Made by a program: the position numbers and the translations under genes | Part shown: piece by piece, positions 10,004 through 61,743 of the stretch | How positions within the stretch are numbered: the first letter of the stretch is position 1 | How the letters are laid out: the number at the start of each line of letters is the position of its first letter | Source: Ostrea edulis | Lineage: Eukaryota | Reading direction: 5' to 3' | DNA length: 64,000 nucleotides | Assembly: GCF_947568905.1 (NCBI RefSeq) | Contig: NC_079168.1 | Location: 71,858,001-71,922,000, forward strand | The notes under the pieces: generated by a model | Told to the model about the DNA's origin: nothing | Seen by the model: only the letters and a program-made list of their open reading frames with translations | The model's database searches: none

Positions 10004-10758
10004 TCAGCGTCCTAACACTCGGCGGAAAATGTTCCCCATTCTTTTTCTTTGTTTCAAAGCAGTAAGTACAACGTTCTCAAACACACTCTGTACGCTCTGC
10101 AAGTCCGCCGAGGAACACTCTAGGTACCGATCCGCCCCGATTTCTTTGGCCATTTTTTGTCCCTCTTCAGTAGTGACACTGTCCCCTCCCGGAGTGACCT
10201 CCTCCATGCTGACACTGTCCACTCCATGGGAGGATCGGGTATCCGTTTGGGTAGCCACTACGATAATTGGAACGCGTTTTCCTAGAAAGTCTTTGACTTC
10301 AGGGGCCCAGAATTCCCGGACACTCTCAAAGGAGTCCCTGTCGGACACCGAGAAACAGAGCAGGAGGACTTCGCTGTCCTTGTAGCTGAAGGACCGCAGT
10401 TCAGTGTACTCATGCTGAAAAACACACACACAAAACCCATTAATCTAAGCAATAAGAACAAGTTTGATGTACTTCATAGTTATAAACTTGAAGCAAAACT
10501 AAATCTTTATTGTTTTCTTTGGATATAGAAAATAAGTACTTAATCGACGCTTACCTCTCCGGCGGAATCAAAGATGCTGACCACATATTTGTCCCCTCCC
10601 ACTGTGGATTTACCGGCATAGTTATTAAAGACGGTAGACACATACTCCTGGGGCATAGTTTGTTGGGAGAACACCTCCGACAGACATGTTTTCCCCACCA
10701 TCCCGTCGCCGATCACCGTGCAGCTAATAGGCTTTTTCATGTCGCTTAGATGGACCAT
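10004..10758 (-). CDS. Atypical Rho-family GTPase paralogue 1 (Cdc42/RhoL-like), 204 aa; exons 10758-10555 and 10414-10004
   Basis: Spliced ORF has G1 GDGMVGKT, switch I YVSTVFNNY, G3 DSAGE, G4 ATQTD, G5 ECSS. The 140-nt intron runs GTAAGC...TTTCAG, phase 0. Ends RKRMGNIFRRVLGR-stop with no CAAX. Confidence 0.93.
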
Positions 10759-12170
10759 CGTATTCCCCTTAACAAAATGAACGCAGAGTCGATTGAATAA
10801 TGATAAAAATAGACAAGATCGCGCAGTTTTTAAACGTAGTCTAAGTCATGGGATTCGCTGGCAGCCAATCATGTGCGGGCTCACGCGGCTCTCTGATTAC
10901 CTGTATAGATTTTTACCTTTGTAACGAGGTGTGACAGTGTTTGTATTTCCTATCGTATTCACGATAATCCTGATTCTGGAACTTCCGTTTACGTTCGGAT
11001 TAATGACGAAAGACACAAACAATTACCGAATGTCACTAAAAATTACACGTTATTTCGCGAGAGTTTCTGATTTAGAACTCTGAGTTATCAGAAAGAAATG
11101 CAATACCTTTATCATTAATATTCTATCAATACATCGGTAAAAGTATTATCTACAATCATGTGTTTTGTTGCACGTTTAAAATTCATATTTATTTGTTTCG
11201 TCCCAGATTTTTGCACTAATTACGCAACGTCACATTTTCTTTATATTTTATTTAATATATATATATATATATATAAATCTGTGTGTGTGTTTCGTCCTAT
11301 ATTTTGCATTAATTACGCAATTCTTTAACAAATTACAAATCAGAAATAAGCTATGATTGGCACTATTAGATTTTACATGCTTCCTTGCACTTTTGTTTAT
11401 ATAATACGGTAAATGTACATGTTTTGCAGTTGGTGCTATTAATATATTCAATTATTTAAGCATTGGGGATTAACTGCTTATAAAGTATAAAAATCCTTGA
11501 AAACAATCAAGATTTCCTTTCAGTTTTAATTTGCCTTTATTTACACTCTTTAAAATCACCACCAAATGCATCTAATACTGCTTGGTCCCAGCCTGAGGTC
11601 ATTGACCGGAAGGCAAGACTTCGGACGGTTCCTATATACCAAAGTTTGACAATGGCATTGACCTCCGATTTGGTCAGTCTTTTTTTTTAATGACATTCAA
11701 ATATTTTTCTCCTCCAAGTTGTTTGATTACCGAGAAATTAGAAATCAGGTCAAGTTTTTTTTTTTCGTGGAATCAACAGCCTTCGTGCATGCATTATCAC
11801 CTAGGTAAACACAGATGGCGCTTGTTCGTACCTGTATTAGCGTTCTCTAAAAGTTGTATACATAATGTGTATCCTTGATGTAATAAAGTAGGACGGAAGA
11901 TAGATACGCATTCTGAGTATTATTATAAATCATCAAATAAGATAATTACATTAATAGTAAGAATTACCTCCTGTTGAAGTAGAAAGAAGTGGATATTTTA
12001 CATCAACCAATTATCCTATAGCACCGTCTCTTGCTAACCCCCCACCCCCAGATTATAATCTACAGACACAGTCTTATTAAGTTTTACATTAATTTGTGGA
12101 TAGGGGTACAGGTGTTTTGCATGGACTTAAATAGTTAATTTAGATATGTGAGGTATATTAGGTTTTTTTT

Positions 12171-12239
12171 GTTGCTGTTGATATTGTATATGTTGCTGTT
12201 GATATTGTATATGTTGCTGTTGATATTGTATATGTTGCT
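12171..12239. repeat. 21-bp tandem repeat, 3.3 copies
   Basis: Unit GTTGCTGTTGATATTGTATAT. Confidence 0.9.
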
Positions 12240-12789
12240 TTTGGAGGAAGTGAATATTTCACAAATGAATTAATTTTGTTTCATAGCACTGTTTCTCGTT
12301 ACCCTTTGTATCAAGTTAATTAACAAAACAAGATGTGTTACATACGCGTCTTCATTTCAGCTGAGTCAGCAATCAGCATATGACACCACCTTATTCATTA
12401 TGAGTATTGAGTATGTCCATTGCATATATGAACAATATAACTGTGTGCTGGAACTCAGTCCTGTATTATATTTGTGATTTGAAACATATGTTCAGTGTTA
12501 TGCCCGTTCCAATTGGGAATAAATAAATCATATCATATAGGCCTACATGAGATTATAATGAGAATATATTATTGTTTGCAAAGTGTATCAAAAGAAAATT
12601 CAAGTTTCAATTAAAGTAGGATGGAAATACATATTTCATACTAGAACGTTCAACCTGCATTATACGTGGTAACGGAGAGCACCAGTATTAACAGATCTCC
12701 CGGACCATGTGACTAATGACTAACTAATATAGTGAAGATGTTTGTCTACAACCGGATCCTGCCCAGTTTACAATTAAACACTCTAGTTT

Positions 12790-13120
12790 ATTTCAAAAGT
12801 AGTCTATAAAGATACAATTTTTATTTGTCAGAGCAATAAAAACAACAAATATTACACACAAAGTCAATATTATGAAAGGGGCGTTGTGATAAATATCGTT
12901 GATACGTAGTCACTCACGGATATGTGAAAAATAATACGATAAATTGAACATGCTTTAGTTTATTTCAGAAATAGTCTATAAAAAGCCAGAGCAATGAAAA
13001 CACAAAGTCGAGATAAACGATTTATATACAACGTCAATATTATGAAAGGGGCGTTAAAAAAAAGATCATTGATACCTAGTCACGGATATGTAGAAATATA
13101 CAGCATATAACGATCAATTG
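12790..13120. repeat. Degenerate tandem duplication, unit about 170 bp
   Basis: TAGTCTATAAA, GTCAATATTATGAAAGGGGCGTT and TCACGGATATGT each occur twice in the same order. Confidence 0.75.
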
Positions 13121-13789
13121 TCTGGTGAGTTTTTGAATAGTAACTTTAATTGTTCTTTCTTTATTAAGACTCGGAAAACAAATATGATTTATCTTTTTAA
13201 ATTTACAGAAAACATGTTTACAGTACATGCAATATGCAAACATTTCTGTGAAAAAGTCAAAAGTCACAAGGCTATCGCGGTGTTATCTGTCAGTGACTCT
13301 CAAAATAAATATAGACATTTTCTCACTTCCGAGACACTGCTGCATATTACACGTATATTTGTATTATATCAAGTTTGATTAAGATAAACTAATCTGAACT
13401 AATCTGACCTTCTTCTATCTCTATATCAACAAGAGAATTTTGGAAATTGCCCGACGAGTTATGAATGAAAAATCGCTGCACTCAGCACGTATTTGTACTG
13501 TAGCTCAAACTTTATCAAGTAGATGACATCGTTTGGTGCAAAATTCAAAAAAATGATATGGGCCCTTAGACACACTCCAACCTATTCTGCACCTTGCTAT
13601 TTAGTTCAAACACGACTTCTATTAAGTTCACACATCTAACGAAAGTGAAACAATTACTTATCTCTCTGAACTGCACTGTTCTAGTAATACATGTATTTCT
13701 TTTCGTTTCAAGTGCAGAAAGTCATTATTTTTTATCTAATAATTGGCAGTGGGAAATGGCATTACACACAGATAAGCTTTAAGGGGTAC

Positions 13790-14010
13790 AAGATGCATAG
13801 ACCCCATTATTTACATACATTCTACCGTCTCGGAGGCCTTAAAGCAACTCTACAGTCTATAAATGAAATTTATGTTCTTAGACGCCCTAATTTTATGGCA
13901 AAAATAGATCTGTGTAAGCCATTTCTGCTTAATTCTACTTTGAGGTGTGACCATGATTTAACCAGACAAAAAATGATAACTGCAACGTTTAGTTTTGATC
14001 TCTCCGGCAA
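13790..14010 (+). mobile_element. Possible DIRS/Ngaro-type reverse transcriptase relic
   Basis: TLQSINE...NFMAKIDL resembles the conserved segment before the KxDL motif; flanks are degenerate. Confidence 0.33.
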
Positions 14011-16242
14011 AAGCAATCATCTTAGTGGTTCCGGACATTTCCCAGCGCTTGTTAATGTCGCAGGTAATTAGACATTGGTTGGAGGAAATTGGGCTTTTCT
14101 TAATGACCATTAATTTCATAATGGTAACCTGTGATAGAGCGGTTCAACTTCAAACATATGTTATAAACGCATTTTTATCAAATAATCTATCTTAAACAAA
14201 TATAACCTGACAAACGAATTCAAAGCATACCTACTATTGCTTAGCTGATACAGTTGAAAAGAATTATAATACATGTAATAATCTATATTTTGTTGCTTAT
14301 AAAGCATGGCAGACACACGGAAAGCACCTTGTCTGTCTAGGTGGAGTCAGTTTAGAAAGAAGCACTTGCATGCAGTTTAACATTTCGAAGCCTTTGACAT
14401 TGTCTATTTCAAAGCATCATTGACCTTACAGCAATTCCACGTGCAGGTTTCCTAACAACAACTCACAATCTAAAAAGTGGAAGCAGTAAACGAGGCCATT
14501 GATTGCATGAATTTATGTGTAGGAACAAGTACTATGGCCTAGACGTCCAATTCCTTTTAGCGGAGTTCCGATACACGATTAGATTCCTGGACCAATCGGG
14601 AACGCGACGAGTAAATGATGCTATAACTTCCTTGTTACTGGGGTCCAAAGTAAGTGACATAGCGGGTTCTGCTAATTAACAGATATGACCCTCTGCAGGA
14701 GAGCTTTTCTAGAGGGGGCCCAGGTGGACTGTTCCGTGACATGTATTGTGAATTCATTGTAATTTAAGAAGGGTGGTTGTCAAACTTTCCATACCTCCCT
14801 GCAAAGGGGAAGAGTGAGACATTCCAAAATATCTTTATTGCCCTTTACAACCTATTCAGAAATATGTAGTTCACTTTATATGGGGACTTAAAAATGGATA
14901 TAAATTATCATGAGGCATCATGTGTGCATTAATGAAACTATTGTGTTGAAAATACAAAATTTTCGGGTTCTACTTCTTCAATCGATTTCCTCTCAATGCT
15001 TTACATTGGTACGAGTGTATGGAAGACGTATCGATTCTCACGATTTTTTTTTACCAAAAAAAATCTCTCCTTTTATTTAATTTTTTTTAAATTTAATTTT
15101 GGCTCAATTTTATCTGAAGGGAATGAATAATACAGACAGATGTTTAAAAATTGCAGAAAATTTTGAAATGTCCTTCAAACCAATACTCTTTATTCACTTA
15201 GAAATAATCATGCAGAACAGCAATGCCTTCTATTAATTTGTTGGAATATGCATAATCAGTAGTTCCGAGAAGGGAGTTTTAACTGAAGTGACATTTTTTC
15301 CTATAACTTTTTGGTTTCATAGTGAAAATATAGTCATGATCATTATAAAAATGTAACATAGTGTGGTATTTAAAAAAATCTTTTAAAAAGAGAAGATGAC
15401 CGCATCGTGTTTTGTAATTATCATTAACATGCGTATACAGGTATCTGCACATTAAAGAAAGAAATTTTACTTTTTTAAAAATACATGAGGGTATGCCTGT
15501 AACTGTGACACTTTATGCCAGCATACTTCGTGAAGCACGTTAGCGCGTCAGGAAAAGTATTCTAGCGTAAAGCGTTGCTGTTGTTTTCAAAGATGAAATT
15601 AATTAATTTTATTTTTTTTTACATTTTACTTCCATTTCTGTTGGGATATTCACATCCGTTAAAATATTTATCAAAATTAATACGAACATTGTTCACATTC
15701 TTGAGGAAATGGCTATCATTTCAATTGGTAAAGATTTCGAAGGTTAAAAAAATTGAAATGTAAATATTAGATTATGAAAAATAATCATTCTTGGCTTGTG
15801 ATGAAGCAGGAAAATGAATTTAATAAAAAACGACCTAAGAGGACAATATTCAGTGTCCGAATTAAATACTAAATATGGTTAACACACTTCTGAAGACAAT
15901 ACATTCTCAACAAAGCCTTATTGTGTTCATATTTTAATTCATTCAACCACACTTTGGACATTAAATTCAACAATAACGGAATTTATGAATTTTTTTATTC
16001 ACTGACTTTAGTACATTGATGTAATCATTTGACAATCGCTTTGTAATAGTTCTGCAAGTCCATACGTTTGTTGCACCGTCTGCCGTATCAACCTCTGCGA
16101 AACGTTCCCAGCAATAGTGGCACACGTCTCCGTCCGAAAAGGTGTAGACCCTGGTTTTGAAGATGCAGATATCAGCACGAAAAGGCTCTTATATCTGTAA
16201 GTTTCTTGGCCGAAACCTCTTTCTTTTTCTCTCAAAGTTTTC

Positions 16243-16916
16243 TCAACGTCCGACAATTCTTTTTATAACACGGAATCGTCCTTTCTTTTGCACTAAAACA
16301 GCGGACACGACACTTTCAAATATCTGCTGGATTCGAACTTTGTCGGTCGAAGAACACTCAATAAAAGAGTGTCCACCAACCTCTCTGCAAAACTCAAAGC
16401 CTTCCTCAAATGTCACGTGACCGGAGTCATCTTCTCGTCTGAGGTCCACATGTGTGGCCACAAGAATAATGTTCTGCCTTTTGTTCATATTTCGTATGGT
16501 GGGTATCCAGAAGTCTTTTACATTTCTGAACGACTCCCGATCTACTGCACTGTAGCAGACGACAAACACTTCTCTGCTGCTATTTGTTGTCTTCGTGAAG
16601 TCTGTTTGGTACTACAACATGAACAAGACTGTTATATAAATTTTAGTAATTCTTGTGAAAGGTTGCAATGATAAAACTCAAATTAACGCATTCACGTTAA
16701 CTCTTTGCAAATAGTAGTATTTACCTCTCCACCAAAATCCGTAATGTTGACCAAGTACTTGTCTCCATAGACCGATACCACGGCAGTGTACTTCTCCATC
16801 ACCGTCGCCATGTATCCGTCAGGGGGCACCTGGCCAACGAACGACTGGATCAGGCTCGATTTACCGACCATCCCATCTCCGACTACAGAACAACTAACAG
16901 GCTTTGACACAACCAT
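16243..16916 (-). CDS. Atypical Rho-family GTPase paralogue 2, 186 aa; exons 16916-16725 and 16611-16243
   Basis: G1 GDGMVGKS, switch I YMATVMEKY, G3 DFGGE, G4 ATHVD, G5 ECSS. The 113-nt intron runs GTAAAT...TTGTAG and this acceptor keeps the frame (YQTDFTK...EVFVVCYS). First true ATG is at 16916 (the ORF-track start is TTG). Ends KKGRFRVIKRIVGR-stop. Confidence 0.9.
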
Positions 16917-18409: not shown

Positions 18410-18690
18410 CAGTATGACCTAGACTTACAATCATGACAGCATAAAAGATGACATTTTCCCGCCATTTTCTGACACAAAATGACAATTTTGATTGAACAAA
18501 CTTCATATTCATGCCAGATTCATCTTCCACCATACTTTGGTGAAGGAATTATTTGTCTAAATCTGCGTCCTACATATATATTTTTTTATGAAAGACAAAT
18601 GTTCGCGAACTTGCGTAAAATTGAGCGCAATGTCTTAGATACATGTCTTAGAGACAGCCTGTATGTAAAACTGGGTTGGACGTGATTTAC
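18410..18690 (+). pseudogene. Possible TIR-domain remnant
   Basis: QYDLDL...KDDIFPPF...SCQIHLPPYFGEGIICLNLRPTYIFF loosely follows YD-x-P-LC-H-RDF-G-I-NI spacing across frameshifts. Weak match made by eye. Confidence 0.28.
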
Positions 18691-24198: not shown

Positions 24199-24973
24199 TC
24201 ACCGGTTGTTCTTTCCCTGATTGGTTAAGATTTTCTTATTTCCCAAAGTGAGCTGAAGAGAAAGACCAGCCACGATCTGGAAGACCTTAGTAATTCCTAC
24301 TTTCTGGACAGCAGAACATTCCACAAAGGCAGATATATTGAATTCATTGCACAAATTCCTTCCCTCTTCTTCTGTGACGTGGTTTGGGTTATTCTCACAT
24401 CGCAAGTCTGTGTGTGTTGCTGCAAGCACAATAGGAATCTTTGGGTTGATGTTTCGGACCATTGGTAACCAGAAAGATTTCGCGTTGTGGAAAGAATCTT
24501 TATCCACCACATTGTAGCAGACGACTGTTACTAGATTACTGGACTGACAGTTTGGTCTCACGTGCAGATCCTCCTGTACAATGAAAAATACATTCTATAA
24601 GATATCCACTTTCATTTTGGAAGAAGGTACAAGGACAAATATAAATAAACACCATCTGACATTAAGGAAGCCAAGCTTTGAATAATTCACATTTTGATGT
24701 TCTCTCCCGATATATAAAAACACTGCTATGTAGTAATTCTGTAAGAAAATGTGCTCTTACCTCAATAGAGAGATCCGTTATATGCAGTGTATGCTTGGCC
24801 CCCGCCAGACTGAGGTGAGTGCTATAGTTATCCATGAATACTGTGGCTGTATAGTTGGGGGACAGCGTATATCCCAGAAATGAGCGAATAATGGATGTTT
24901 TACCAACCATCCCATCCCCAAGCATTACACAGCGGAGGCTGCTTCCCTTTCCGGTGTTTACCATGGTTTTCAT
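24199..24973 (-). CDS. Atypical Rho-family GTPase paralogue 3 with degenerate G3 motif, 195 aa; exons 24973-24761 and 24573-24199
   Basis: G1 GDGMVGKT, switch I YTATVFMDNY, G3 DLSIE, G4 ATHTD, G5 ECSA. The 187-nt intron runs GTAAGA...GTACAG. The ORF is open but the C-terminus (GNKKILTNQGKNNR) diverges from the other four. Confidence 0.87.
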
Positions 24974-42590: not shown

Positions 42591-43256
42591 ATGGTTGTTG
42601 CAATGCTGAAATCTGTGCAGTGTACAGTAATCGGGGACGGTTTTGTTGGAAAGTCCTGCCTGGTGCAGAAAATCGCGGATGGTCAGTTTCATGAGGAATA
42701 TATCGCCACTCTTAAGGACGACTACAATACCAATATATTGATCAATGGTGACCACTATGACCTCAGTATAACTGATATCGCTGGAGAGGTAAGGAACGAA
42801 CAGACCATACTTGTAGTTTGTAGTCATAGTTAAATTAAACTTCGTAAAACTTTGAAAAGCAGACTTTGCATTACAATATACATTTCCTCTTTGCAGCACG
42901 AAGATTTATCTTCTGTAGAAATCCCGGACGTCTACATCGTCTGCTTCAGCTTAGCGGACAAAAATTCCATGGACAGTGTAGAAGACTTCTGGGTCCCAAA
43001 AGTTAGAGCTCTTAGAAGGGACGTTCCAATTGTTCTTGTTGGGACCCAGACGGATGTGAGAAAATCTTTACATAATGGACATATCACAACCGAAAAAGGG
43101 CAAAGGTTAGCAAAAAGACTTGGAGTGGATTACTACGTAGAGTGTTCAGCGAAAGAGAACTCTGGGATTCAAGAAACGTTTCTAAAAGCTGTACAGGCTA
43201 AAGTAAGAAATGACAAGAGGAAATTAAACATTATCAAGAGAATTCTTGACAGATGA
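42591..43256 (+). CDS. Atypical Rho-family GTPase paralogue 4, 185 aa; exons 42591-42788 and 42897-43256
   Basis: G1 GDGFVGKS, switch [11 protein letters not shown]3 DIAGE, G4 GTQTD, G5 ECSAK. The 108-nt intron runs GTAAGG...TTGCAG. Ends [13 protein letters not shown]-stop. Confidence 0.93.
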
Positions 43257-46080: not shown

Positions 46081-46411
46081 AGTGAAAAAACTTAGAAAAG
46101 TTTCATTTGAATTGTCACAAATTCGTCAGTTTGGTGATATCTTAGTTTCCAGGCTGAGCAATGGTGAAAACTTACCTTCTTCTTAAAAAAGTTAATTGTT
46201 TTTATTCCACAAGTTACAACACTTTACTGTGACATCGCGAAAATAAATTTCTTGTATGATGTCAATTATCTCAAATATTGAAGAAGTACAGGAGTTTAGT
46301 AGTTAGTAATGTTGCTCTATTTAAGAGATTACAACTGAGTTCAATGATCCCATCAATTAGAAACAGAATCTTATGTGATTCATGAACTTTTTCATTATTT
46401 AGTTCAATGGA

Positions 46412-47151
46412 TGAAAGGTGAAGATAACGAACAGTGACCAATCTCATAACTCCTATAAGCAATACAAAATAGAGAGTTGGGCAAACACGGACCTCTGGAT
46501 ACACATGAGGTCCCTAAGAGGAGTAAGCATCCCCTGTCGACCAGTCACACCCGTCGTGAGCCCTATATCTTGATCAGGTAAACGGAGTTATTCGTAGTCA
46601 AAATCAGTGTGCCACGAACAGTCTAACAATCGGTATGAAACATGTCAGACAGCATTTGACCCAATCATGGTTGTATTGGCAAACTAGATCGTTATAACAA
46701 CCATAGAATTTGTGAAATGCTGATTTTAACCGAGGTTGTCTGAACCCCTGCACCATCAACTTGTTTGTCAGTAGCCTGTTTTGATTTTAAAACTGGCCAT
46801 ACTCAGAACAAGCTCTTGCGTATCGAATCAGTTGAGAGATGTAAACTCCATATGCAGGTGATAATGGAATATTGCTACATAAATATGGGAAGTTGACGAT
46901 GGAGAAGTTGAAATCATCCCGTTTGTCATAAAGCTGAATTGTTAGTTTGCTGTTAATATCTACTCTCAATAAAATATCTAAGTATGAAGCAGAAGTGGAT
47001 GACTCCGTGGTGTCTTTTATTTCGATTTCTCTGGGATATATTGAATCGACATATGGATGAAAATTATTATTGTTAATAGATATTACATCGTCTATATATC
47101 TAAATGTCGAATTGAAGGCCATAGTAAGAATTTTTTCTTCTCACGTAGAAG
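46412..47151 (-). mobile_element. Penelope-like retroelement 3' fragment (RT at C-terminus, Naiad-type layout) with terminal repeat
   Basis: ORF 47122-46787 has FRYIDD and LYDKRDDFNFSIVNFP...YGVYISQLIRYARAC. The frame continues past a stop (LLTNKLMVQGF...) and then goes into the terminal repeat with no GIY-YIG after the RT. Confidence 0.85.
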
Positions 47152-48430
47152 TTATGTAAGAAACTTGATGGCATGAATGAATGAACATTATCTTGCTATA
47201 TTTAATATCAGTCCCATATTTCATAACCCAAAGCGCAGCATTCAGATTTTAATGGAACGAGGCACATCCAAACAGAAAGCAATGTCCTCCTAATGCTTTT
47301 TCTGCATAAGTACAACATTTTTCAATTTTTACTGTTACTTGAATTTCAGAAACAACATCCTCTCTTGGGTTGTGTCACATGTATCATTTCACACAATAAG
47401 GTTGCACGTTCGGTGGTCTTGACCTTGTGTCGGAGTACCCTTTTGTTTGTAGTAAAGAGGCACCTGCTAGGAGTCCTTGTTGTTGTGCGACGGAGACCCT
47501 TTGTTCTGCGTCTGTCCTCGGCTGGGCTTTCATGTATGATCTGTACTTTTAACTGTACAGATTACAATCTCAACAGAATCTTTTAACTCCTGTTTACTGT
47601 TTCAAATTACAACATGAGGGATTTTAAAAATTTCATTGAGAATAAACAATGCAACAGAGGCGACATTGTTTCTGTAACCGTGTCATACATTCCGCTGAGA
47701 TGTAACAGTGCAAACTCTGATAGTATTGGCGGGGACGTTTCCAGTCCTACAATGCTGGTACGGCAAAATTCATCGATAGGAAGATAAGTTCAAACTTGCT
47801 GTTGAGATGCCAGATTCTACGTGTTATTGTTGTTTATTCGTGTATCTTATACTAGTAAATATGTTTGTTTATCTCACAATTGATATCAGTAAATATATAT
47901 AAAGATGTCAAGGAAATAAAATAAAATCCTGATTCGGTAAATACATAGTTTGGTATCATGTAATAAGTCACGTAGGATAAATCTGACAGATTAAAAAGCT
48001 ATAAACATGCGCTATGCTTTTTCGCCATTCGACACCCTGTTTTAAAACGCTTTCTTAAAGTTATTTATAAAGTTATTTATTGCAAGTCAAATTTGGATTA
48101 GATAGTAAAATACCGTCATAAAAATTGTTATCGGTTTAGAAGGAAGAAAACAATCTGAGCGATTGTATATGTTAGATTTTTATTTATTTATTAATCTAAA
48201 GAAGAAATCAACATGCATTCGTCACACTTTTAATGAGACGCAGTCAAGAAATGGTTATGTTCTAATTACAAATTTCTCTCTTACATTTTTTTCTCATGTT
48301 CCTATAGAATTAAAAAAAACTAATTTACATTGGCAGTATAGTCATTTATTGGATTCTGTCTAAAACATTGTGCATAAATTGATTTTCAAGATCGTAAATG
48401 TAATTAGAGAAATTGCAGATATCAGAAGCA

Positions 48431-48660
48431 AGGTGAAGATAACGAACAGTGATCAATCTCATAACTCCTATAAGCAATACAAAATAGATAGTTGGGCAAA
48501 CACGGACCCCTGGATACACCAGAGGTGGGATCAGGTGCCTAGGAGGAGTAAGCACCCCCTGTTGACCGGTCACACCCGCCGTGAGCCCTATATCCTGATC
48601 AGGTAAACGAAGTTATCCGCAGTCATAATCAATGTGCAAAGAACGGCTTATGACCCAATG
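48431..48660 (-). mobile_element. Solo Penelope-like terminal fragment
   Basis: AAGGTGAAGATAACGAACAGTGATC...CACACCCGCCGTGAGCCC. Shorter relics of the same family lie at about 17250-17356, 32513-32540, 34672-34759, 54454-54609, 55204-55242, 57633-57722 and 60380-60495. Confidence 0.8.
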
Positions 48661-50484: not shown

Positions 50485-50504
50485 TAATTGTTCTGGATGA
50501 CTAG

Positions 50505-50862
50505 TCACAATATAACGGAACAGTGATCAATCTCATAACTCTTACAAGGTGAAGATAACGAACAGTGATCAATCTTATAACTCCTACAAGCAATACAAAA
50601 TAGATAGTTGGGCAAACACGGACCCCTGGACACACCAGAGGTGGGATCAGGTGCCTAGGAGGAGTAAGCATCCCCTGTTGACCGGTCACACTTGCCGTGA
50701 GTCCCATATCCTGATCAGGTAAACGGAGTTATCCGCAGTCAAAATCAGTGTGCCAAGAACGGCTTAACAATCGGTATGAAACACGTCAGACAGCAATTCA
50801 AATTAGAGAGTTGGGCAAACATGGAACCCTGAATACACCAGAGACGGGATCAGGTGCCTAAG
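50505..50862 (-). mobile_element. Partial tandem copies of the Penelope-like terminal repeat
   Basis: GAACAGTGATCAATCT and GAGTTGGGCAAACA...GATCAGGTGCCTA segments are each repeated in tandem. Confidence 0.75.
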
Positions 50863-54938: not shown

Positions 54939-55199
54939 CCCGGGATCCGGGTTAGAATAGGTCCTCTGTGTTCCTTGCGTGTCAAAAGAGGCTACTAAAT
55001 GTTTACGGAGACGTCACCATTGCCAGTGAAGGACTGCAAAATTTTGGCCTATGTTCGGCGCTTACCTTTGAGCAGGGAGGGATCCTTGTCGTGCCACACC
55101 TGGTGTGACACGGGGCTTCGGGTTTTGCAATCTCATCCGAAGGACCTCTTACGGCAAGCAAGGGGTTCTGAGGACCTATTCTAACCCAGATCCCCACGG
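54939..55199. mobile_element. Rearranged SINE type A: plus-strand head fused to a minus-strand copy
   Basis: 54939-55000 is a head on the plus strand; 55001-55199 is body plus head on the minus strand. Confidence 0.75.
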
Positions 55200-56849
55200 A
55201 ATGCTATGAGACTGATCACTGTTCGTTATCTTCACCTTTCATCAATATATACTCCTTGAAATGAATCAAACGAGCCCCCCACCCCCCACCCAAAAAAAAT
55301 TGAGGGGAAACTGAAATTAATGTGTTAGCTAGGGGGTGAAGATTAAAAAGATGATAGTGTCTTACAATCGTCATCATCCTTACTTCTAAAGAAACATTCT
55401 TACATTTATAACACACTTTGAAGTAAACGAACTTACTTAGCTAAATTATCTATAACGATACGTCCTAATTTGACATGGATTCATTTAAGCCACGGCGTCT
55501 AGATTGATGTAAGAAATAAAGCTGTTGTATTCTCTACTGAGCTGTATCGTACTGATTTACACCGGTAATCGTCTTTAAGAAGATCGATACACCAATCATC
55601 TATTTCACCTACATCACCCACACTAGCATCACAGGACATTAAAGACGATTAGGTGGGCCGAGTTTCGTCATTTGCGTCTTTTCTGTTACTTGACTTTTCA
55701 ACTAGTTCTCCAGACGCTCCGATATGTTGATATCTAGATATACGTACATGCAAAGTAATCCCCCATGAATTTTATCATGACTCTCAATACAGGCCTTAAG
55801 TACTAAATGTAGTTAAAGGAAAGCATATGTTGGATCCCGGATGACGGGCGAACGTTCTTAGTCTGATGAATCTCGCAAATCCTGTGTTCGGAGTTCAGGC
55901 GTCTGTACTTAACTTGACCCGCGACATTCAATGTTCTTGAAGTTATGCAACAGCAGCGATTTTATAACATTACCAGCTGGTTTGTCTTTACGTCCACTAT
56001 CATTAACATTAATTATGCATTGTTTTAATGTCAAATCAAGGACAGACAACGCCTATTTTTGGAGGATGTTCCGTAGGAGACGTGCACTATACGGATCGTG
56101 GTGACAAAGCACTATCTCACTATATGTATCGTATATGTTAAATTATTTCTAATTTCTGCTGTATGCACACCCTTGGTGAGCTTATTTCACTCAGAATGAA
56201 TATACATGTATATATGTATAAGTACCTCATTAATACTATTGCTTAGAAATTAGTTTAGTCAAGCGAAAATACAAAATTTGAAATATTTCTGAAAATGTGT
56301 TTGAATCCGTAAATTTAATACTTAGAAGACTTAAGACATTGAATAAGGTGACTTGCATAATATCTTTGACGTTACTTTCCATGTGTTTATTACTTCTACT
56401 ACGAAATCATCAAATGGGGATGTTTCTAGAGTTCAAGACGTCCATGATTGGCTAAATTTGAATTTCAATTACATTGCTGGCTTTGAATTATCTCTAAAAA
56501 GATACGTGATTGTGAAATTTTTCTAATCAGAATTTCCCAATATAGGGAAACCGATTTAAATGTGTGGAATTCGTCAGATCTTATGAAATCCCTTTATCAG
56601 GTATCACTCCGTGGTTTTGATAATTTAAAATTCTCTTTCTGTCCGAGACGAGAACGATGTCAGCAAGTGCTCGTAGGCCTTAGTACTTACTTTAGGGACT
56701 GGACAACGCACAGCAGAGTTAGATTTATTCAGAGCAGTAGTTTCATCTTTATTTCAAACTGATTCAAGTATTTCCTTATTCTAGTATCCGTGTCGTCTTC
56801 ACAGGTTTTGTAAGAATTGTATTCATATACTCAATATAGATATGCATCT

Positions 56850-57245
56850 AGAACTGATGTATCGATATTATTTATTGAAAATTCTTATAGTTGTAATGCT
56901 TTTGATGTTAGCGTCCTGTCTGAGAACAAGAGGAATAAATAAGAGATGTTGGCAACCACTCAGATTCACTACAATCTGCAGCATTGGGCCACAAAAGAAA
57001 GGTTTGTGAAAATGGCACCTTCATTGTCTGCTGGGTAACATCTACCTTGCTTTGTGCACTCCGATGCAGTCGTAATGTCGGAGTAGGTCTCCGTATTTGA
57101 TACATCTTTTATTGTTTCAGTTCAATGTCGCAGAACCACAAAGCGATGTCTGTACTTTAAAGGAGTCTCCAACAACAGCGATGCTTGTGTACTGTAAGGA
57201 TTAATGGATGTTCATGAATGCATCCCATGTATAAAGCAATGTATT
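56850..57245 (-). pseudogene. Possible TIR-domain remnant upstream of paralogue 5
   Basis: YTWDAFM at 57233-57213, then about 30 codons later LRH*...ETYSDITTASECTK...FVAQCCRL, and LFLLFSD...YLY further on. Frameshifted; match made by eye. Confidence 0.3.
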
Positions 57246-58814
57246 GAATGAAACTAGAGTGCAGTTGTAACAGTTTACACAAAAGAGTTCAATGTTTCAT
57301 AAGCACCTGCATAAAATGCCCGTTTGCAAGCACACAGGTAACAATGTCAGTTTCCTAATACCAGTGATCGGATGTAATGAATTATTCATGATTTATTTAT
57401 CATTTGTTTATTAATTCGTTTATCTATTTGCTAGCAACATGGTATTGGTATACGAAGGTTTAAAGTCAGCGCAGAACACGGAGGGGTAATATCGGGTCCA
57501 CTAAAAGTAATATAAGAAATCGTTTAGCAAGGTGGACACAAATAACGTACGAATAATTTATTCTTCGTTTCTCGCCCCCTGATTCTGAGGATTGTTTGTG
57601 TTTTCACCATTTTCGTGAAAAATATAACTATAAATGAAGATAACGAACAGTGATCAATCTCATAATTTCTATAAAGAATCCAAAATTAAGGGTAGGGCAT
57701 ACATGGACCCCTGGATACAACAGAGTTTATCATTTATGTTACATTGTATATTTAAAACAGGCAATAAGCAATTATTAAGTATATGCACATTTCATGAGGC
57801 ACAGCAGTTGAAGTCGGATCGTTGTTTACACGACACTCGTAAATTATAAGATATTGGCAAATGACGAAAAACAAATCCCAAGGTGTATCAGTGCATTGTC
57901 TACGACATCGTTCTATGTTATTGAACCCTTATTACAACTTACCTGTCAATCAGCTGATGTGAACTTTAATAGATTTTTTCAGAAGGTCAAACTGCAACAA
58001 AGTACAGGTTAAAAAAATAGATCGAATTCATTATTGTACCATTGTACATGCTGAGATGTCGATCGTGCAATATGACCTGTACTAGGTCACAAAGAAACTA
58101 AGTACGAAAGAAAACAAACACGTTTTGAAGATACGAAGTCTATAATTTAGTTTAGGACTTAATACTTCTTTAACAATGATGATGATAATGTACATATAAT
58201 TGATTAGGTTTGGTTGGACATATCTAATCTTCTGACCGGATATATTAAAAGGTACCAGTGTAAGTTATTTAAGAATAAGGACATTAATCTGAAAGAGACG
58301 GACAACAAATTCAAAATCATTGGGCACGGATATTACTAAGGGAGTGTAAATTACCATGAAAAATTCAGATGATTGTGATCTGTAAAATACGGTACATAAT
58401 TCAGCATTTGTATAGACTTCATTAATTCCCCTTCACTGTATGGTGTGTGCTTTTACTTTGCCTTCAATAGATGCTTTTCAATCTCAACATTGTAACGTTA
58501 TACACCATTAGGGACAACCCTTCTCTATAATAGGATAACGTATGTGATATATCGTACTATACAATATCCTTGGTAACTTACGTCAGCTGTCTCAGACTTG
58601 ATGAGAGTATGGAGGAGGTTTCATTATCATGTTAATGTTGTATATTATATCCGTGATTTGACAGATCCTATGAACATGTTAACTCCTGTATCATGATGAC
58701 TGTATAATAGCAGCTCGGACGTCAGGTTATCCTTATTATTGAAATTAGGCGGTTTTAATGCTTCGTACACCCATTTTAACGTCTTATAAGTGCTTGAAAT
58801 TTTGCTTTTTTTTT

Positions 58815-58818
<4 letters not shown>

Positions 58819-58860
<42 letters not shown>
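58819..58860. repeat. (TC)n microsatellite
   Basis: About 21 TC units. Confidence 0.95.
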
Positions 58861-58864
<4 letters not shown>

Positions 58865-58870
58865 CTCTGT

Positions 58871-59509
58871 TAGTCCGAAATATCTTGCGTTTTCCTGGGT
58901 TTTTTTTATGATTTTGATATTTATCGTGCCGTCCCGGTAAATATTAAAATCATTTAAAGGGACTGATTCACGATTTTCCCCAAAATTTTCTTCTTCACTT
59001 TCAATGATCAAAATCTACTGCCTGATGTGTTTAAAAGATTTCACATAAAAATTAAAGTGATACGTTATCACAGAAGCTCATTGTAGAGAGTTTATTATTT
59101 GTTTTGTAAACATAGATTGCGGTGTGTTATTGTTTACGAAATTTTCAAAAGAAATATATATCGATCTAAGTTTATTATATCTTTCACATTTCAAACATTT
59201 TTGGGGTAAAATGTGTCATCTAAAAGTTAAAATTTGGGACTACGCAAAATTAAGATGCTTTATTTTACAAAATCAATATTTTACTTGCTTGTTTGTATAC
59301 ATAAAATGACTCGAGTCTTTGTTTACATAACAAAGATTCAAGGCTAAAATATTGCTTTTATTCTTGTATTTAGAAGGTCCAAATTTTGGATGTCAACATT
59401 AAATGAGTTATATTTTTAATGTTTAACATCAAAAATGAAAAATATTTTTATCAAAAATCGTGAACCAGTCCCTTTAAAAAGCCAGGAAAACGTCAGATAT
59501 TTCGGACTA
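58871..59509. repeat. Outer 28-bp inverted repeat enclosing the MITE
   Basis: TAGTCCGAAATATC..CGTTTTCCTGG at 58871-58898 is the reverse complement of 59482-59509 with two mismatches. Confidence 0.75.
58958..59473. mobile_element. Non-autonomous DNA transposon (Kolobok-like MITE), 516 bp
   Basis: 20-bp TIRs AGGGACTG(A/G)TTCACGATTTT with one mismatch; TTAA on both sides (58954-58957 and 59474-59477); AG...CT termini. Confidence 0.8.
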
Positions 59510-60930
59510 TCTCTTTGTGTGCGCGCGTGTGTGTGGATACCGACATGTTGTCTGATCTTGGCTTTTAACTTCTCCTTTCCATCCACTACTGCTCGTGGGA
59601 AACCCATATTCAATACCCTACACTGATGAACTGTAAATAACGTATTGTTTTGAAGTGTTATTACGAAACAATGTATAATAACAAACAAAACGTTTATATC
59701 TATCAAAATGAAAAGGACATCAATACTTTATTATTAACACGAGAAAATTTGTCAGACTTGAAAATGACTTTGACAGGAATGTATTGTGTTTTCTGTGCGT
59801 TTAGAATATATTCACGAAGAATCTCCCCAAATTTTCTGAGCAAGAGGGTTACACCTTATGTCATGAACTCAAGAACCCTTTTATCATTTTTTTTTTCTAT
59901 AGGTCACATCGACTAAACAAGTACCGATATTAATTTAAAGAAGAGTGCATTGTATTTATTACATTGTATTGAGTACGTTGTATTGACTCAGTGGTACAGA
60001 ATAACATTTGTACCGTGATGTTACCAAGGCCATACTCCTGTTCCACGATAATGATCCAATAGACGTCTCCATTGTCCTTAAAATGTCGTCTCGACATATT
60101 CTTAATAATCAAATTAACCGTTAAGTTATAAACAGAGTGACACGTGAAGATAAAACTTGACAATGTAAGAGATTAACAAAACAAGGTATTGGGAAACAAT
60201 ACGGGGAACTGGTGAGATGATATCTACCTATAGTCTAATGTCAGCTACAGCTTGTCCAGAACGGGACTTTTTTTTGACGTCTTCAAAAACAACTTTGCTT
60301 CCCAATTATTTGTAAGAATATGTTTGTGACAATTTCAAATTATCTCTTGCAAATTATTTGTGACATTTTCAAAACATGTCGGGTGTGACCTGGTCGACAG
60401 TTGGTGTTTCCAGGGCCCATGTTTGCTCTACTCTCAATTTTGTAGTATTTATAAGATCTATAAAATTGTTGATCATGTTCGGTATCTTCACCTTTTTTTC
60501 GTTCTCAGATAATGCAATTAATGATTTTTAACGTTTCATAAAGAATGTCAGATGACAAAGAATTTGATAAGAAAAAAGTATGAATAATCATATAATTCAG
60601 ACTAAACACAATAAATGAACGATCATAAGGAATCGATAGAACTCATACAGAAATGAATGTCCCCCAAAACTTTCACCTTTGTGACACATTTAGAGTCTTT
60701 TATGTAGAGAATGGTCATTACGACAACAGTGTGTGACAATGTTTTCATTACTGTTAAAATATTTTGAAAAGCTATATCTATATCTATGTAGACACAAATT
60801 AAATATTGTATTAATATCGATATGAAATGGTGAGTGTATGTACTTAGTGCTCTGATAATCCGGCAATGTCCTTTTGTACGTGTATCAAATGACTAAAGAT
60901 CGGATCTTTTGAACTATAATCTGACGGTTC

Positions 60931-60953
60931 CTACGTCACAGCTGGATATATAA
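60931..60953 (+). promoter_or_regulatory. Putative core promoter of paralogue 5: CRE/ATF-like CTACGTCACAG plus TATA box
   Basis: CTACGTCACAG at 60931-60941 and TATATAA at 60947-60953, about 120 nt before the ATG. Confidence 0.6.
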
Positions 60954-61075
60954 GGAGCTGAAGACTTCAACCACTACCATTTAACTGGAATCTCCCAAAC
61001 GACTACGTGGTAGTTGCATTATAGTATATTCACAGTTTGTTACATCCTTCTTTACGACCACTGTTGGAATTCAAA

Positions 61076-61743
61076 ATGGTTGCTGCTGCAGAGAAAGCTG
61101 TTCATTGCACTGTTGTTGGTGATGGATTTGTGGGAAAGTCGAGTCTTGTTCAGAAGTTTGTGCGTGGACAATTCAACCCGGAATATGTCGCCACGCTAAA
61201 GGATGAATACACCGCTAGAGTGTCTACAAATGGAGATGTGTATCGCCTGCATGTCACCGACATTGCTGGAGAGGTAAGAACATTGCACATCTTCATTTCT
61301 TTTCGTCATGATTAAGATGATGAGTTTTCGCATGCTCTACACAGTTTACTAGTACTAATGTATATGATTTATATCTTGAATAGCACGAAGACATGTCCTC
61401 TCTACCAACACCCGAAATCTTCATCGTCTGCTTCAGCTTAGTGGACAGAGATTCGCTGGATAGCGTCGAAAACTTCTGGATGCCTAAAATTCGCTCCGTG
61501 GGAAAATATATCCCTATCGTACTTGTTGGTACCCAGTCAGACATGCGAAATGCAACTGAAAATGGACATATATCGGCTGAACAAGGACGTAAAATAGCTA
61601 AAAGTTTGGGAACTGAATACTACCTAGAGTGCTCCGCTAAAACGGATATGAAAATTCGGGAAGTATTTGAAAAGACTGTACATGCCAGAATTCGCCATTG
61701 CAAGAAAAAAGTGAACATTATAAAACGCATGTTTAGTCGTTGA
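61076..61743 (+). CDS. Atypical Rho-family GTPase paralogue 5, 185 aa; exons 61076-61273 and 61384-61743
   Basis: G1 GDGFVGKS, switch [11 protein letters not shown]3 DIAGE, G4 GTQSD, G5 ECSAK. The 110-nt intron runs GTAAGA...GAATAG with a CTAAT branch-like motif; start context is CAAAATG. Ends [13 protein letters not shown]-stop. Closest to paralogue 4 (identical exon lengths, 198 and 360 nt). Confidence 0.93.

What the first reader, a model, noticed from the sequence alone, without database searches (positions are those of the whole stretch)
10004..61743. Five-gene cluster defining a candidate atypical Rho-GTPase subfamily
Seen: five intact paralogues over about 52 kb with one shared intron position, all combining Glu61, Met/Phe13, a TQxD or THxD G4 motif and no CAAX. 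Known: classical Rho proteins need Gln61 for hydrolysis and a prenylated CAAX for membrane binding; Rnd, RhoH, RhoU/V, RhoBTB and Miro each deviate, but I know of none with this combination. Inference: a lineage-specific expansion kept intact while neighbouring sequence decayed, so probably functional and possibly undescribed.
Basis: partly seen in the sequence, partly recalled or inferred. Interest (0 to 1): 0.85.

Follow-up and report, generated by a model that had tools for sequence, protein, structure and literature searches.

The report
Mollusc-only tail-anchored Rho-like GTPase cluster
A flat-oyster chromosome carries five working copies of a small Rho-type switch protein that lacks the usual lipid anchor and Rho insert; the family occurs across molluscs, is mislabelled in databases, and was left out of the one published bivalve Rho census I found.

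Summary
The window carries five intact two-exon small-GTPase genes (184-204 aa). Each has one phase-0 GT..AG intron directly after a Glu at Ras/Rho position 61, Met or Phe at position 13, a TQxD or THxD G4 motif, and no CAAX box.

They are functional genes:
- dN/dS against Crassostrea or Saccostrea orthologues is 0.02-0.2, with dS saturated.
- Crassostrea orthologues of g1-g4 occur as spliced cDNA contigs.
- One RNA-seq contig of the window's own species covers g1 exon 2 and its 3'UTR.

The interpretation needs correcting. The cluster does not define the family. It belongs to a mollusc-wide clade (chiton, gastropods, bivalves; support 97/90) with these shared traits: a bulky residue 13, a Rho insert cut to about 5 residues, and a polybasic amphipathic C-terminal helix in place of CAAX. 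Gln61 is probably ancestral, and Glu61 needs at least four changes of state on the tree.

The clade sits apart from my Cdc42/RhoJ/RhoU-V, Rac, RhoG and RhoA references, but its sister group is unresolved. RhoH, Rnd, Mtl and mollusc Tc10 could not be included. Databases name the members inconsistently, and the 2015 bivalve Rho census omits them. Function is inferred only.

The scan's earlier notes on this locus come from this same window.

The parts
10004..10758 (-). g1: exon 1 10555-10758, intron 10415-10554 (140 nt), exon 2 10004-10414 including the stop; 204 aa. It is the most conserved copy.
   Evidence: Searches give the gene model. One search gives Pfam Ras matches on both exons. One search gives 93% aa identity and dN/dS 0.02-0.03 against C. 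angulata. Searches show Crassostrea cDNA contigs spliced at this junction. One search shows a 588-nt RNA-seq contig, 100% identical, on 9735-10322.
10178..10216 (-). 13-aa in-frame insertion (SVSMEEVTPGGDS) in the vestigial insert loop of g1. It looks like a 39-nt tandem duplication (GVDSVSMEE / GGDSVTTEE) and is absent from the Crassostrea orthologues.
   Evidence: One search gives the alignment. One search shows the insertion in an independent Logan ORF (P0099). One search shows it inside the RNA contig.
16243..16916 (-). g2: exon 1 16725-16916, intron 16612-16724 (113 nt), exon 2 16243-16611; 186 aa; DFGGE, THVD, and a degenerate switch II.
   Evidence: The orthologue P0139 lies in the same order in C. 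angulata. Spliced cDNA contigs are L015 and L016. dN/dS is 0.08-0.15.
24199..24973 (-). g3: exon 1 24761-24973, intron 24574-24760 (187 nt), exon 2 24199-24573; 195 aa; DLSIE (no Gly60), THTD, and a polar basic tail without the hydrophobic motif.
   Evidence: The orthologue P0311/P0176 keeps DLSIEEDLHVRPNCQSSNLVTVVCY exactly. Spliced cDNA contigs are L008 and L009. dN/dS is about 0.05-0.06.
42591..43256 (+). g4: exon 1 42591-42788, intron 42789-42896 (108 nt), exon 2 42897-43256; 185 aa; [17 protein letters not shown], and a 4-residue switch II deletion.
   Evidence: Its relatives are Sech_g4like and C. gigas K1RHD5 (P0296), with spliced cDNA contigs L011 and L012. dN is 0.26-0.29 with dS saturated.
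61076..61743 (+). g5: exon 1 61076-61273, intron 61274-61383 (110 nt), exon 2 61384-61743; 185 aa; [17 protein letters not shown], and a 4-residue switch II deletion.
   Evidence: Orthologues P0002 and P0003 in Saccostrea are 69-72% identical. dN/dS is 0.14-0.20.
10555..10557 (-). GAG codon for Glu at position 61, the last codon before the intron. The equivalent codons are 16725-16727 (-), 24761-24763 (-), 42786-42788 (+) and 61271-61273 (+).
   Evidence: Potamilus has the same intron position but a Gln there.
10007..10054 (-). C-terminal basic amphipathic tail of g1 (KQRKRMGNIFRRVLGR). The equivalents are g2 16246-16293 (-), g4 43206-43253 (+) and g5 61693-61740 (+). The g3 tail, 24202-24249 (-), is basic but not hydrophobic.
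   Evidence: One search lists the tails. One search gives net charge +6 to +8 over the last 18 aa for g1, g2, g4 and g5 (g3 +4) and hydrophobic moment 0.55-0.60 for g1, g4 and g5. predict the tail as a continuation of helix alpha5.

Best explanation
The window holds a conserved oyster gene cluster of five old paralogues. They belong to a mollusc-restricted branch of the Rho (Rac/Cdc42-type) GTPases.

Shown:
- They are real, spliced genes under purifying selection.
- The residues that hold guanine nucleotide and Mg (P-loop Gly/Lys, switch I Thr35, Asp57, G4 Asp118) are invariant or nearly so across the family.
- The Rho insert helix is reduced to a short loop.
- There is no prenylation box. Helix alpha5 is predicted to run on into a strongly basic, partly amphipathic tail.

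Inferred:
- The proteins bind GTP/GDP but run an atypical cycle. A bulky Met/Phe13, Glu instead of Gln61, a remodelled or shortened switch II and no prenyl group should uncouple them from classical RhoGAPs, DH-type GEFs and RhoGDI.
- They would reach acidic membranes, or a partner, through the polybasic amphipathic helix rather than a lipid.
- The paralogues, which differ most in switch I and II, would address different partners.
- Their activity is probably set by expression level, as in Rnd and RhoH, rather than by a GEF/GAP switch.
For: Gene models, one shared phase-0 intron and motifs.

Pfam Ras on all exons.

Rho-type identity:
- The best solved relatives by sequence are all Rho family. 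TC10 is best for g1 and g5 orthologues, RhoU for the g3 orthologue, and Cdc42 for the family profile.
- Foldseek top hits are RhoA/C, Rac1, Cdc42 and EhRho1, with TM 0.8-0.95.

Monophyletic mollusc clade of 32 rows, support 97/90, outside the Cdc42/RhoJ/RhoU-V clade (95/83) and the Rac clade. The family profile beats a generic Rho profile by 70-112 bits for 18 representatives; the 16 looked up are molluscs and the other two were identified as oyster orthologues by sequence.

Invariant G17, D18, G22, K23, T42, W104 and D126 across 25 members.

Insert loss:
- The distance from the G4 Asp to the G5 Ser is 28-34 residues, against 40 in Rac, Cdc42, RhoJ, RhoU/V and RhoG.
- The AF2 models (pLDDT 90.7 and 85.3) show no insert helix and an alpha5 of 27-28 residues running through the tail. 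The g5-type model lacks a switch II helix.

Tail charge +6 to +8 for g1, g2, g4 and g5 (+4 for g3).

Selection: dN/dS 0.02-0.2.

Expression:
- Intron-less contigs of Crassostrea orthologues of g1 (146 blocks), g2, g3 and g4-like.
- An RNA contig on g1 with nothing over 5 kb of intergenic DNA.

Synteny with C. angulata and C. gigas.
Against: - No biochemical, localisation or phenotype data exist for any member. Nucleotide binding, the GAP/GEF/GDI uncoupling and membrane binding are all inferences.
- Reports on Ras Q61E disagree: lower hydrolysis in one account, higher intrinsic hydrolysis in another. Glu61 does not predict the cycle.
- The tail's amphipathicity is only moderate. The hydrophobic moment is in the top 4-10% of shuffles for g1, g4 and g5, not for g2, and g3 lacks the motif. 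The tail could equally be a calmodulin-, importin- or partner-binding site.
- dS is saturated (above 1), so the dN/dS values are rough.
- Spliced expression in the window's own species is shown for no gene. Only g1 exon 2 and its 3'UTR are covered, and g5-type transcripts were not checked anywhere.
- The tree lacks RhoH, Rnd, RhoD/F, RhoBTB, Drosophila Mtl/RhoL and mollusc Tc10/Mig/RhoU references.
Confidence: 0.6

Rival explanations
1. The genes are not a separate subfamily. They would be fast-evolving members of an already described one: TC10/RhoJ-Q or Cdc42 (as NCBI names them), Mtl/Mig-2, or an invertebrate counterpart of vertebrate RhoH.
For: - TC10 is the best solved match for g1- and g5-type proteins, and Cdc42 is best for the family profile.
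- The AU test does not reject the family as sister to RhoJ (p 0.51) or to a tick Mig-2-like protein that also has GDGMVGKT and a short insert.
- The ESM Atlas embedding search puts RhoH clusters first, at 0.97.
- RhoH shares VVATQTD, a shortened insert (33 residues by my count from the sequence; described as shorter), a substituted residue 61 and a polybasic C-terminus.
Against: - Bivalves already have bona fide Cdc42, Tc10, Mig and RhoU genes with CAAX or CCFL ends and full inserts, so this family is additional to them.
- The family is monophyletic at 97/90 and falls outside the starred Cdc42/RhoJ/RhoU-V clade in the free tree.
- Score margins among TC10, Cdc42, Rac and RhoA are small.
- RhoH keeps CAAX, Trp56, Pro34 and Ala13 and is known, to my knowledge, only from vertebrates. 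The family's own mollusc cluster scored lower than RhoH in the same embedding search, so that measure does not discriminate.
Confidence: 0.2
2. Some or all copies are pseudo-GTPases: folded G domains that no longer cycle, or no longer bind nucleotide, and act as constitutive scaffolds. g3 (DLSIE) is the clearest candidate.
For: - g3 lacks Gly60 as well as Gln61, and its odd switch II is conserved exactly in Crassostrea.
- A Mytilus member has lost the G3 motif altogether. Haliotis, Argopecten and chiton members have DNSAE, DCSSK and DNASQ.
- Position 61 is free to vary in the family.
Against: The P-loop Lys, Thr35 and Asp118 are invariant and Asp57 is conserved in at least 90% of 25 members, g3's orthologue included. 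This is hard to explain without nucleotide and Mg binding. g1, g2, g4 and g5 keep DxxG.
Confidence: 0.15
3. The five ORFs are decaying or non-functional duplicates that merely look intact.
For: Non-canonical catalytic residue; no annotated full-length protein of the window's own species turned up in the protein searches.
Against: - dN/dS is 0.02-0.2 with dS above 1.
- Orthologues and synteny are conserved across three oyster genera.
- Spliced transcripts of the orthologues exist.
- An RNA contig covers g1.
Confidence: 0.02

Closest known systems
TC10 (RhoQ) / TCL (RhoJ) / Cdc42
   Same: These are the highest-scoring solved relatives. They share the TQxD G4 motif, Phe/Tyr rather than Trp at position 56, Thr35, the ECSA G5 motif and the overall fold. 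NCBI names several family members after them.
   Different: Canonical members have Ala13, Gln61, Pro34, a full 13-residue insert helix (G4-to-G5 distance 40 against 28-34) and a CAAX box. The mollusc clade falls outside the Cdc42/RhoJ/RhoU-V clade in the free tree. A sister relation to RhoJ is not rejected.
RhoH (vertebrate, haematopoietic, GTPase-deficient)
   Same: A shortened Rho insert, VVATQTD, a CYSV beta4 strand, a substituted residue 61 (Asn), a polybasic C-terminus followed by a hydrophobic patch, and regulation thought to be by expression rather than cycling. It is the nearest cluster in the ESM Atlas embedding search.
   Different: RhoH has Ser12, Ala13, Trp56 and Pro34 and keeps a prenylated CKIF box. 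To my knowledge it is known only from vertebrates. It could not be put in my tree.
RhoU / RhoV (Wrch-1 / Chp)
   Same: Atypical members of the Cdc42 branch with TQSD, no Trp56 and no classical CAAX. RhoU is the best solved match for the g3 orthologue.
   Different: RhoU/V keep Gln61, Ala13 and a full insert (distance 40), and end in a palmitoylated CFV/CCFL-type motif. RhoU has an N-terminal extension (my own knowledge). Oysters have a separate bona fide RhoU.
Entamoeba histolytica Rho1
   Same: It gives high structural matches to the model, TM 0.90-0.92 by target.
   Different: An unrelated protist lineage. To my knowledge it keeps a conventional catalytic Gln and C-terminal lipidation.
Rit/Rin and RGK (Rad/Gem/Rem) Ras-family GTPases
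   Same: A working analogy only, from my own knowledge: CAAX-less small GTPases that bind membranes or calmodulin through a polybasic amphipathic C-terminal tail. RGK proteins also have a non-canonical G3 motif (DxWE).
   Different: They are Ras-branch, not Rho-branch, proteins. No sequence relationship beyond the shared G domain was seen; the best 60 solved matches shown in each search are Rho family.

Membership tests
Ras superfamily small GTPase | G domain with G1-G5 motifs, recognised by Pfam Ras (PF00071) | tested here: met
   All ten exon translations exceed the Pfam gathering score. The AF2 models have the 6-strand, 5-helix G fold.
Rho family | Closer to Rho proteins than to Ras, Rab, Arf or Ran | tested here: met
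   The top 60 solved sequences are all Rho family for three members and for the family profile. Foldseek's top 50 are all Rho family.
Rho family | Rho-specific insert helix between beta5 and alpha4 (about 13 residues) | tested here: not met
   The distance from the G4 Asp to the G5 Ser is 31 in g2-g5 and 30 in g1 orthologues, against 40 in Rac, Cdc42, RhoJ, RhoU/V and RhoG. The window's g1 reads 43 only because of its 13-aa insertion. No helix is predicted there.
Rho family (classical members) | C-terminal CAAX prenylation box | tested here: not met
   No Cys at position -4 in any of the 32 family rows. The tails end in ...[KR][VIL][FL][GSD]R.
Rho family (classical members) | Catalytic Gln61 with Gly12 and Ala59 | tested here: not met
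   Gly12 is kept. Position 59 is Ala in g1, g4 and g5, Gly in g2 and Ser in g3. Position 61 is Glu in all five.
Cdc42 / TC10 (RhoJ-Q) subfamily | Nests within the subfamily in a phylogeny | tested here: inconclusive
   The free tree puts the family outside the starred Cdc42/RhoJ/RhoU-V clade. The AU test does not reject a sister relation to RhoJ, p 0.51. Mollusc Tc10 was not available for the tree.
RhoU/V subfamily | C-terminal CFV/CCFL palmitoylation motif, full insert, Gln61 | tested here: not met
   Tails, insert length and residue 61 are.
RhoH | Ser12/Asn61, short insert, polybasic region plus LFSINE plus CKIF box; nests with vertebrate RhoH | tested here: inconclusive
   The short insert, TQTD and polybasic end are shared. 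Ser12, Asn61 and CKIF are not. The phylogenetic test was not possible because no RhoH sequence was available under a tool id.
Rnd subfamily | Substitutions at positions 12, 59 and 61, with a farnesylated CAAX | tested here: not met
   Gly12 is kept and there is no CAAX. Rnd was not in the tree.
RhoBTB / Miro | Extra BTB domains, or EF hands plus a second GTPase domain | tested here: not met
   The proteins are 184-204 aa with one G domain only.

The most novel reading that the evidence does not exclude
Molluscs have their own Rho subfamily, not yet described. In it the prenyl anchor has been replaced by a polybasic amphipathic extension of helix alpha5. The Rho insert is lost, and in the g4/g5 lineage so is the switch II helix. 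The catalytic Gln61 has been exchanged for Glu, or lost, on several branches, which makes a natural series for asking what residue 61 and the insert are for. A less likely extension (about 0.1) is that this clade is the invertebrate counterpart of vertebrate RhoH, which would push the origin of RhoH back to early bilaterians.
Probability: 0.45. Interest if true: 0.6.

Novelty: new variant of a known kind. Interest (0 to 1): 0.45.

Why it matters
Rho GTPases are usually defined by the insert helix and anchored by prenylation. Here a whole animal phylum keeps a Rho-derived branch without either, under selection and expressed. That bears on three points:
1. What the insert and the lipid anchor are needed for.
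2. How atypical, probably GAP- and GDI-independent Rho proteins arise. Glu61 has arisen or been lost several times, in contrast to the Ser/Asn of Rnd and RhoH.
3. Annotation. These proteins are labelled Cdc42, RhoJ, RhoQ, RhoU, RhoL, racD or Rac in different mollusc genomes, and the published bivalve Rho census omits them. Expression studies that report Cdc42 or RhoJ changes in oysters may therefore be reading these genes.

The practical value is moderate. Lineage-specific atypical Rho proteins are not rare, and nothing yet links this family to a phenotype.

Tried and rejected
- **Named reference set.** I used the last word-indexed protein search on an alignment of diverse Rho proteins to obtain named references. 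It returned almost only Rac1, so the tree rests on a thinner reference set.
- **CgRac-2.** This 110-aa, 2-exon gene in the 2015 census looked like a possible partial model of this family. Its sequence in the supplement is a truncated Rac1, so I rejected the idea.
- **ZNFX1-like ORF.** Upstream parts of two Crassostrea cDNA contigs (L003, L004) carry a ZNFX1-like ORF, which suggested a fusion or bicistronic transcript. Those parts are absent from the 10 kb upstream genomic DNA and differ between the two contigs, so I treat them as assembly chimeras.
- **'...VLGRWT' ends.** These occur in metagenome-called ORFs (P0099, P0108, P0109). The window has TGA there, so they are probably TGA read as Trp by the gene caller, not a longer protein.
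- **Extra or decayed copies in the window.** None found.
- **Other genes in the window.** Ten further ORFs had no Pfam match.
- **Literature by accession and by automatic name.** Nothing found. Boureux et al. 2007 is not held.
- **RNA evidence in the window's species.** One small RNA run with one contig was all that was available. The one read-laying run could cover only g1.
- **RhoH comparison.** It could only be done by eye from a paper's supplement.

Full report
**Observation**

The ORF list and the sequence show five small-GTPase genes at the stated places. I joined the exons at the only GT..AG pairs that keep the frame. This gives proteins of 204, 186, 195, 185 and 185 aa (g1-g5). In all five, exon 1 ends with GAG (Glu) followed by GTAAxx. 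Exon 2 starts after a YAG at the residue that aligns with Rho position 62. There is therefore one phase-0 intron, 108-187 nt long, at the same codon boundary in every copy.

All ten exon translations match Pfam Ras above the gathering score. Aligned to Rac1, the P-loops read GDGMVGK(T/S) in g1-g3 and GDGFVGKS in g4-g5. Position 61 is Glu throughout. G4 is TQTD or TQSD in g1, g4 and g5, and THVD or THTD in g2 and g3. None has a Cys four residues from the end.

I add the following:
- g3 has also lost Gly60 (DLSIE).
- g4 and g5 lack four residues of switch II.
- g1 of this species has a 13-aa in-frame insertion, apparently a 39-nt tandem duplication.
- There are no further copies or relics of copies in the window.
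- Ten other ORFs have no Pfam match.

**Are the genes alive?**

Orthologues exist in other oysters:
- g5 is 69-72% identical to the Saccostrea cucullata and S. echinata proteins named 'cdc42 homolog'.
- g1 is 93% identical, outside the insertion, to the Crassostrea angulata and C. virginica proteins named 'RhoJ-like'.
- g2, g3 and g4 also have Crassostrea counterparts.

In C. angulata the order g3, g2, g1 on one strand is kept, with similar spacing. In C. gigas three g4/g5-type genes lie about 30 kb away on the same chromosome. S. echinata and S. cucullata each have a g5-type and a g4-type gene 7 kb apart.

Pairwise dN/dS against these orthologues:

| gene | dN/dS |
|---|---|
| g1 | 0.02-0.03 |
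| g2 | 0.08-0.15 |
| g3 | 0.05-0.06 |
| g4 | about 0.06-0.18 |
| g5 | 0.14-0.20 |

dS is between 1.1 and above 2, so it is saturated and the ratios are rough. All are far below 1.

For the Crassostrea orthologues of g1, g2, g3 and the g4 type, public assemblies hold contigs of about 1 kb on which the full protein is one uninterrupted ORF. For g1 I checked that such contigs align to the genome with a gap exactly at the predicted splice sites. The g1 orthologue is seen in 146 such blocks.

For the window's own species, only one small RNA-seq run was on offer. It has one 588-nt contig, identical to the window, over g1 exon 2 and 269 nt of 3'UTR, and nothing over the 5 kb of intergenic DNA laid with it. 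That contig does not reach the intron. Spliced expression in this species is therefore not shown, and g5-type transcripts were not checked anywhere.

An earlier scan note calls the genome a flat oyster. This fits the divergence I see from Crassostrea and Saccostrea.

**How wide is the family?**

I ran a profile of six members against 1.84 billion representative proteins. About twenty single-domain hits cover the profile to its last residue. The ones I looked up come from:
- Magallana gigas, Pinctada, Mytilus, the scallops Ylistrum, Argopecten and Pecten, Mercenaria and the freshwater mussel Potamilus;
- the gastropods Aplysia, Haliotis, Biomphalaria, Lottia and Candidula;
- the chiton Liolophura.

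Their automatic names contradict each other: cdc42 homolog, RhoJ-like, RhoQ, RhoU, RhoL, racD-like, Rac-like GTP-binding protein 2, RAC1, or uncharacterized.

Scored with a family profile and with a generic Rho profile, 18 representatives favour the family profile by 70-112 bits; the 16 looked up are molluscs and the other two were identified as oyster orthologues by sequence. The next group falls to about 54 bits and below.

The shared characters are:
- Met, sometimes Phe, at position 13;
- Ala or Ser in place of Pro34;
- no Trp56;
- a G4-Asp to G5-Ser distance of 28-34 residues, against 40 in Rac, Cdc42, RhoJ, RhoU/V and RhoG;
- no CAAX box;
- a tail of the form basic cluster, then N, then two hydrophobic residues, then two basic residues, then two hydrophobic residues, then x-R.

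Glu61 is not one of the shared characters. Chiton, most gastropod members, Potamilus, one scallop paralogue, a Mytilus paralogue and a sixth C. gigas lineage keep Gln. Others have His, Lys or Leu, or have lost the motif. On the tree, Glu needs at least four changes of state. The Potamilus gene has the same intron after the residue-61 codon, with Gln there, plus one more intron.

**Placement**

I built a maximum-likelihood tree of 68 G domains under LG+C20+F+G4. It includes Rac1, RhoG, RhoJ, Cdc42, RhoU-like, RhoV, a tick Mig-2-like protein and RhoA-type outgroups.
- All 32 mollusc members form one clade (97/90).
- Inside it is a bivalve clade (100/95).
- g1 groups with a scallop protein. g2, g3 and g4/g5 lie in a pteriomorph group, each with its own Crassostrea or Saccostrea orthologue.
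- The Cdc42/RhoJ/RhoU-V references form a separate starred clade, which also attracts a CAAX-less hemichordate protein. The Rac references form another.
- The branching among these groups is open.

AU tests do not reject the family as sister to RhoJ or to the tick Mig-2-like protein (p about 0.51 each).

By similarity the nearest solved proteins are TC10 and Cdc42, or RhoU for the g3 type. Rac and RhoA are only a few bits behind.

I could not add RhoH, Rnd, RhoD/F, Drosophila Mtl/RhoL or mollusc Tc10, Mig and RhoU, because no tool gave me those sequences under an id. That is the main gap.

RhoH deserves attention. An embedding search put RhoH clusters first. The human sequence printed in a paper's supplement shows VVATQTD, a 33-residue G4-G5 distance by my count, Asn61 and a polybasic end. 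A review states that its insert is shorter and that it is GTPase-deficient. RhoH nevertheless keeps Ser12, Ala13, Trp56, Pro34 and a prenylated CKIF box. In the same embedding search the family's own mollusc cluster scored lower than RhoH, so that measure does not discriminate.

**Structure**

AlphaFold2 with a 25-member family alignment gives confident models for the g1 orthologue (pLDDT 90.7, pTM 0.87) and the g5 orthologue (85.3, 0.84).
- Both have the standard G fold.
- Both have a loop where the insert helix should be.
- Both have a 27-28-residue alpha5 that runs on through the basic tail.
- The g5 type has almost no switch II helix.

Foldseek finds only Rho-family structures (TM 0.8-0.95). 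Among them is Entamoeba Rho1, which to my knowledge is a Rho protein without an insert helix.

The last 18 residues carry a net charge of +6 to +8 in g1, g2, g4 and g5. The hydrophobic moment is 0.55-0.60 for g1, g4 and g5, which is in the top 4-10% of shuffles. It is unremarkable for g2. The g3 tail is basic and polar, with a net charge of +4.

**How it most likely works**

Shown: across 25 members the P-loop Gly/Lys, Thr35, Trp97 and the G4 Asp are invariant, and Asp57 is kept in at least 90%. That pattern is what selection for Mg-nucleotide binding would give.

Inferred:
- With no prenyl group, RhoGDI extraction is not expected.
- With Met/Phe13, Glu61 and an altered switch II, classical RhoGAP catalysis and DH-GEF docking are doubtful.
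- The tail is the obvious candidate for binding acidic membranes. This resembles what I know of Rit/Rin and RGK proteins, a resemblance recalled from memory and not tested here. Calmodulin or another partner is equally possible.
- Whether Glu61 slows or speeds hydrolysis cannot be predicted. One review reports Ras Q61E among mutants with about one-eighth the wild-type rate. A structural paper cites increased intrinsic GTPase activity for the same mutant.

**Is it known?**

The one census of bivalve Rho genes I found (Li et al. 2015, PMC4669188) lists twelve C. gigas genes in nine subfamilies. The sequences I checked in its supplement (Cdc42-1/-2, Rac-1/-2, RhoU, Rnd, Tc10) are none of these genes, and none of the nine listed subfamilies corresponds to this family. 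Its 'CgRac-2' is a truncated Rac1. Searches by accession, by automatic name and by topic found nothing on this family. The library lacks most subscription journals, so this is absence of evidence only.

**Verdict**

The finding is real, and the genes are functional.
- This is one oyster cluster of an old, mollusc-wide, apparently undescribed Rho branch. It is not a family defined by this cluster.
- The more diagnostic characters are the lost insert and the basic helical tail, not Glu61 or TQxD.
- I rate it a new variant of a known kind, of moderate interest. The main uncertainties are the sister group, especially RhoH and Tc10, and everything about biochemical function.

Noticed in passing
L003:1-3490 and L004:1-2246 (Crassostrea Logan contigs): Two cDNA contigs join a long ORF to the g1-orthologue mRNA; in L004 the ORF carries ZNFX1/AAA_11 helicase domains, the L003 ORF was not annotated. 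The upstream parts are absent from the 10 kb of genomic DNA upstream, and only the 719-nt g1 part aligns between the two contigs. They are probably assembly chimeras.
   Followed up: partly
window 2589-2786, 3630-3818, 29849-30043 (+); 776-1003 (+) and 55003-55197 (-): Dispersed repeat whose ORF fragments read ...SLSRIFHSYGDVT(T/I)AGEGLQN(L/V)G(L/I)C... and ...TSAEHRPKFCSP.PAMVTS.... There are several copies in the window, on both strands.
   Followed up: no
window 46271-46504, 48346-48573, 50501-50707 (-); L001 814-1002 and 16682-16849: Another repeat, with ORF ...TGQQG(V/M)LTPPRHLIPPLV.PGVRVCPTIYFVLL.GV.RL(V/I)TVRYLHL.... It recurs in the window and also beside the Saccostrea echinata orthologues, so it is an element shared across oyster genera.
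   Followed up: no
window 46787-47122 (-) and 28477-28716 (-): Two related ORFs (...AFNSTFR..D.V.SI....FH.Y.DSIYP.E.EIK...) with no Pfam match. They are likely relics of a mobile element.
   Followed up: partly
window 10004-10006 (g1 stop codon TGA): Metagenome and Logan gene calls for g1-type exon 2 (P0099, P0108, P0109) run on as ...VLGRWT.... The gene caller probably read TGA as Trp. This is an annotation artefact in public protein sets.
   Followed up: partly
C. gigas OY970750.1 about 5.48-5.53 Mb (L010, L014); proteins P0261 and P0262: Crassostrea has three g4/g5-type genes. It also has a further lineage (XP_011427671, XP_011427788; GDAMIGKS, DLSGQ with Gln61) that has no counterpart in this window.
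   Followed up: partly
P0179 (Ptychodera flava 'cdc42 homolog', 202 aa): A hemichordate Rho protein with a normal P-loop and DTAGQ, a slightly short insert (distance 37) and a CAAX-less basic tail (KKKTEMIRRWFSCLSPKR). It groups with the Cdc42/RhoJ/RhoU-V clade, not with the mollusc family. This may be an independent loss of CAAX.
   Followed up: partly
P0442 / P0217 (tick 'Mig-2-like' or Rac1-like, 188 aa): A tick Rho protein with GDGMVGKT and a short insert (distance 32) that keeps DTAGQ, Trp56 and CAAX. Two of the mollusc family's characters therefore occur elsewhere.
   Followed up: partly
window 58758-59011: A (CT/GA)n microsatellite gives poly-(Ser-Leu) and poly-(Glu-Arg) ORFs on the two strands.
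   Followed up: no
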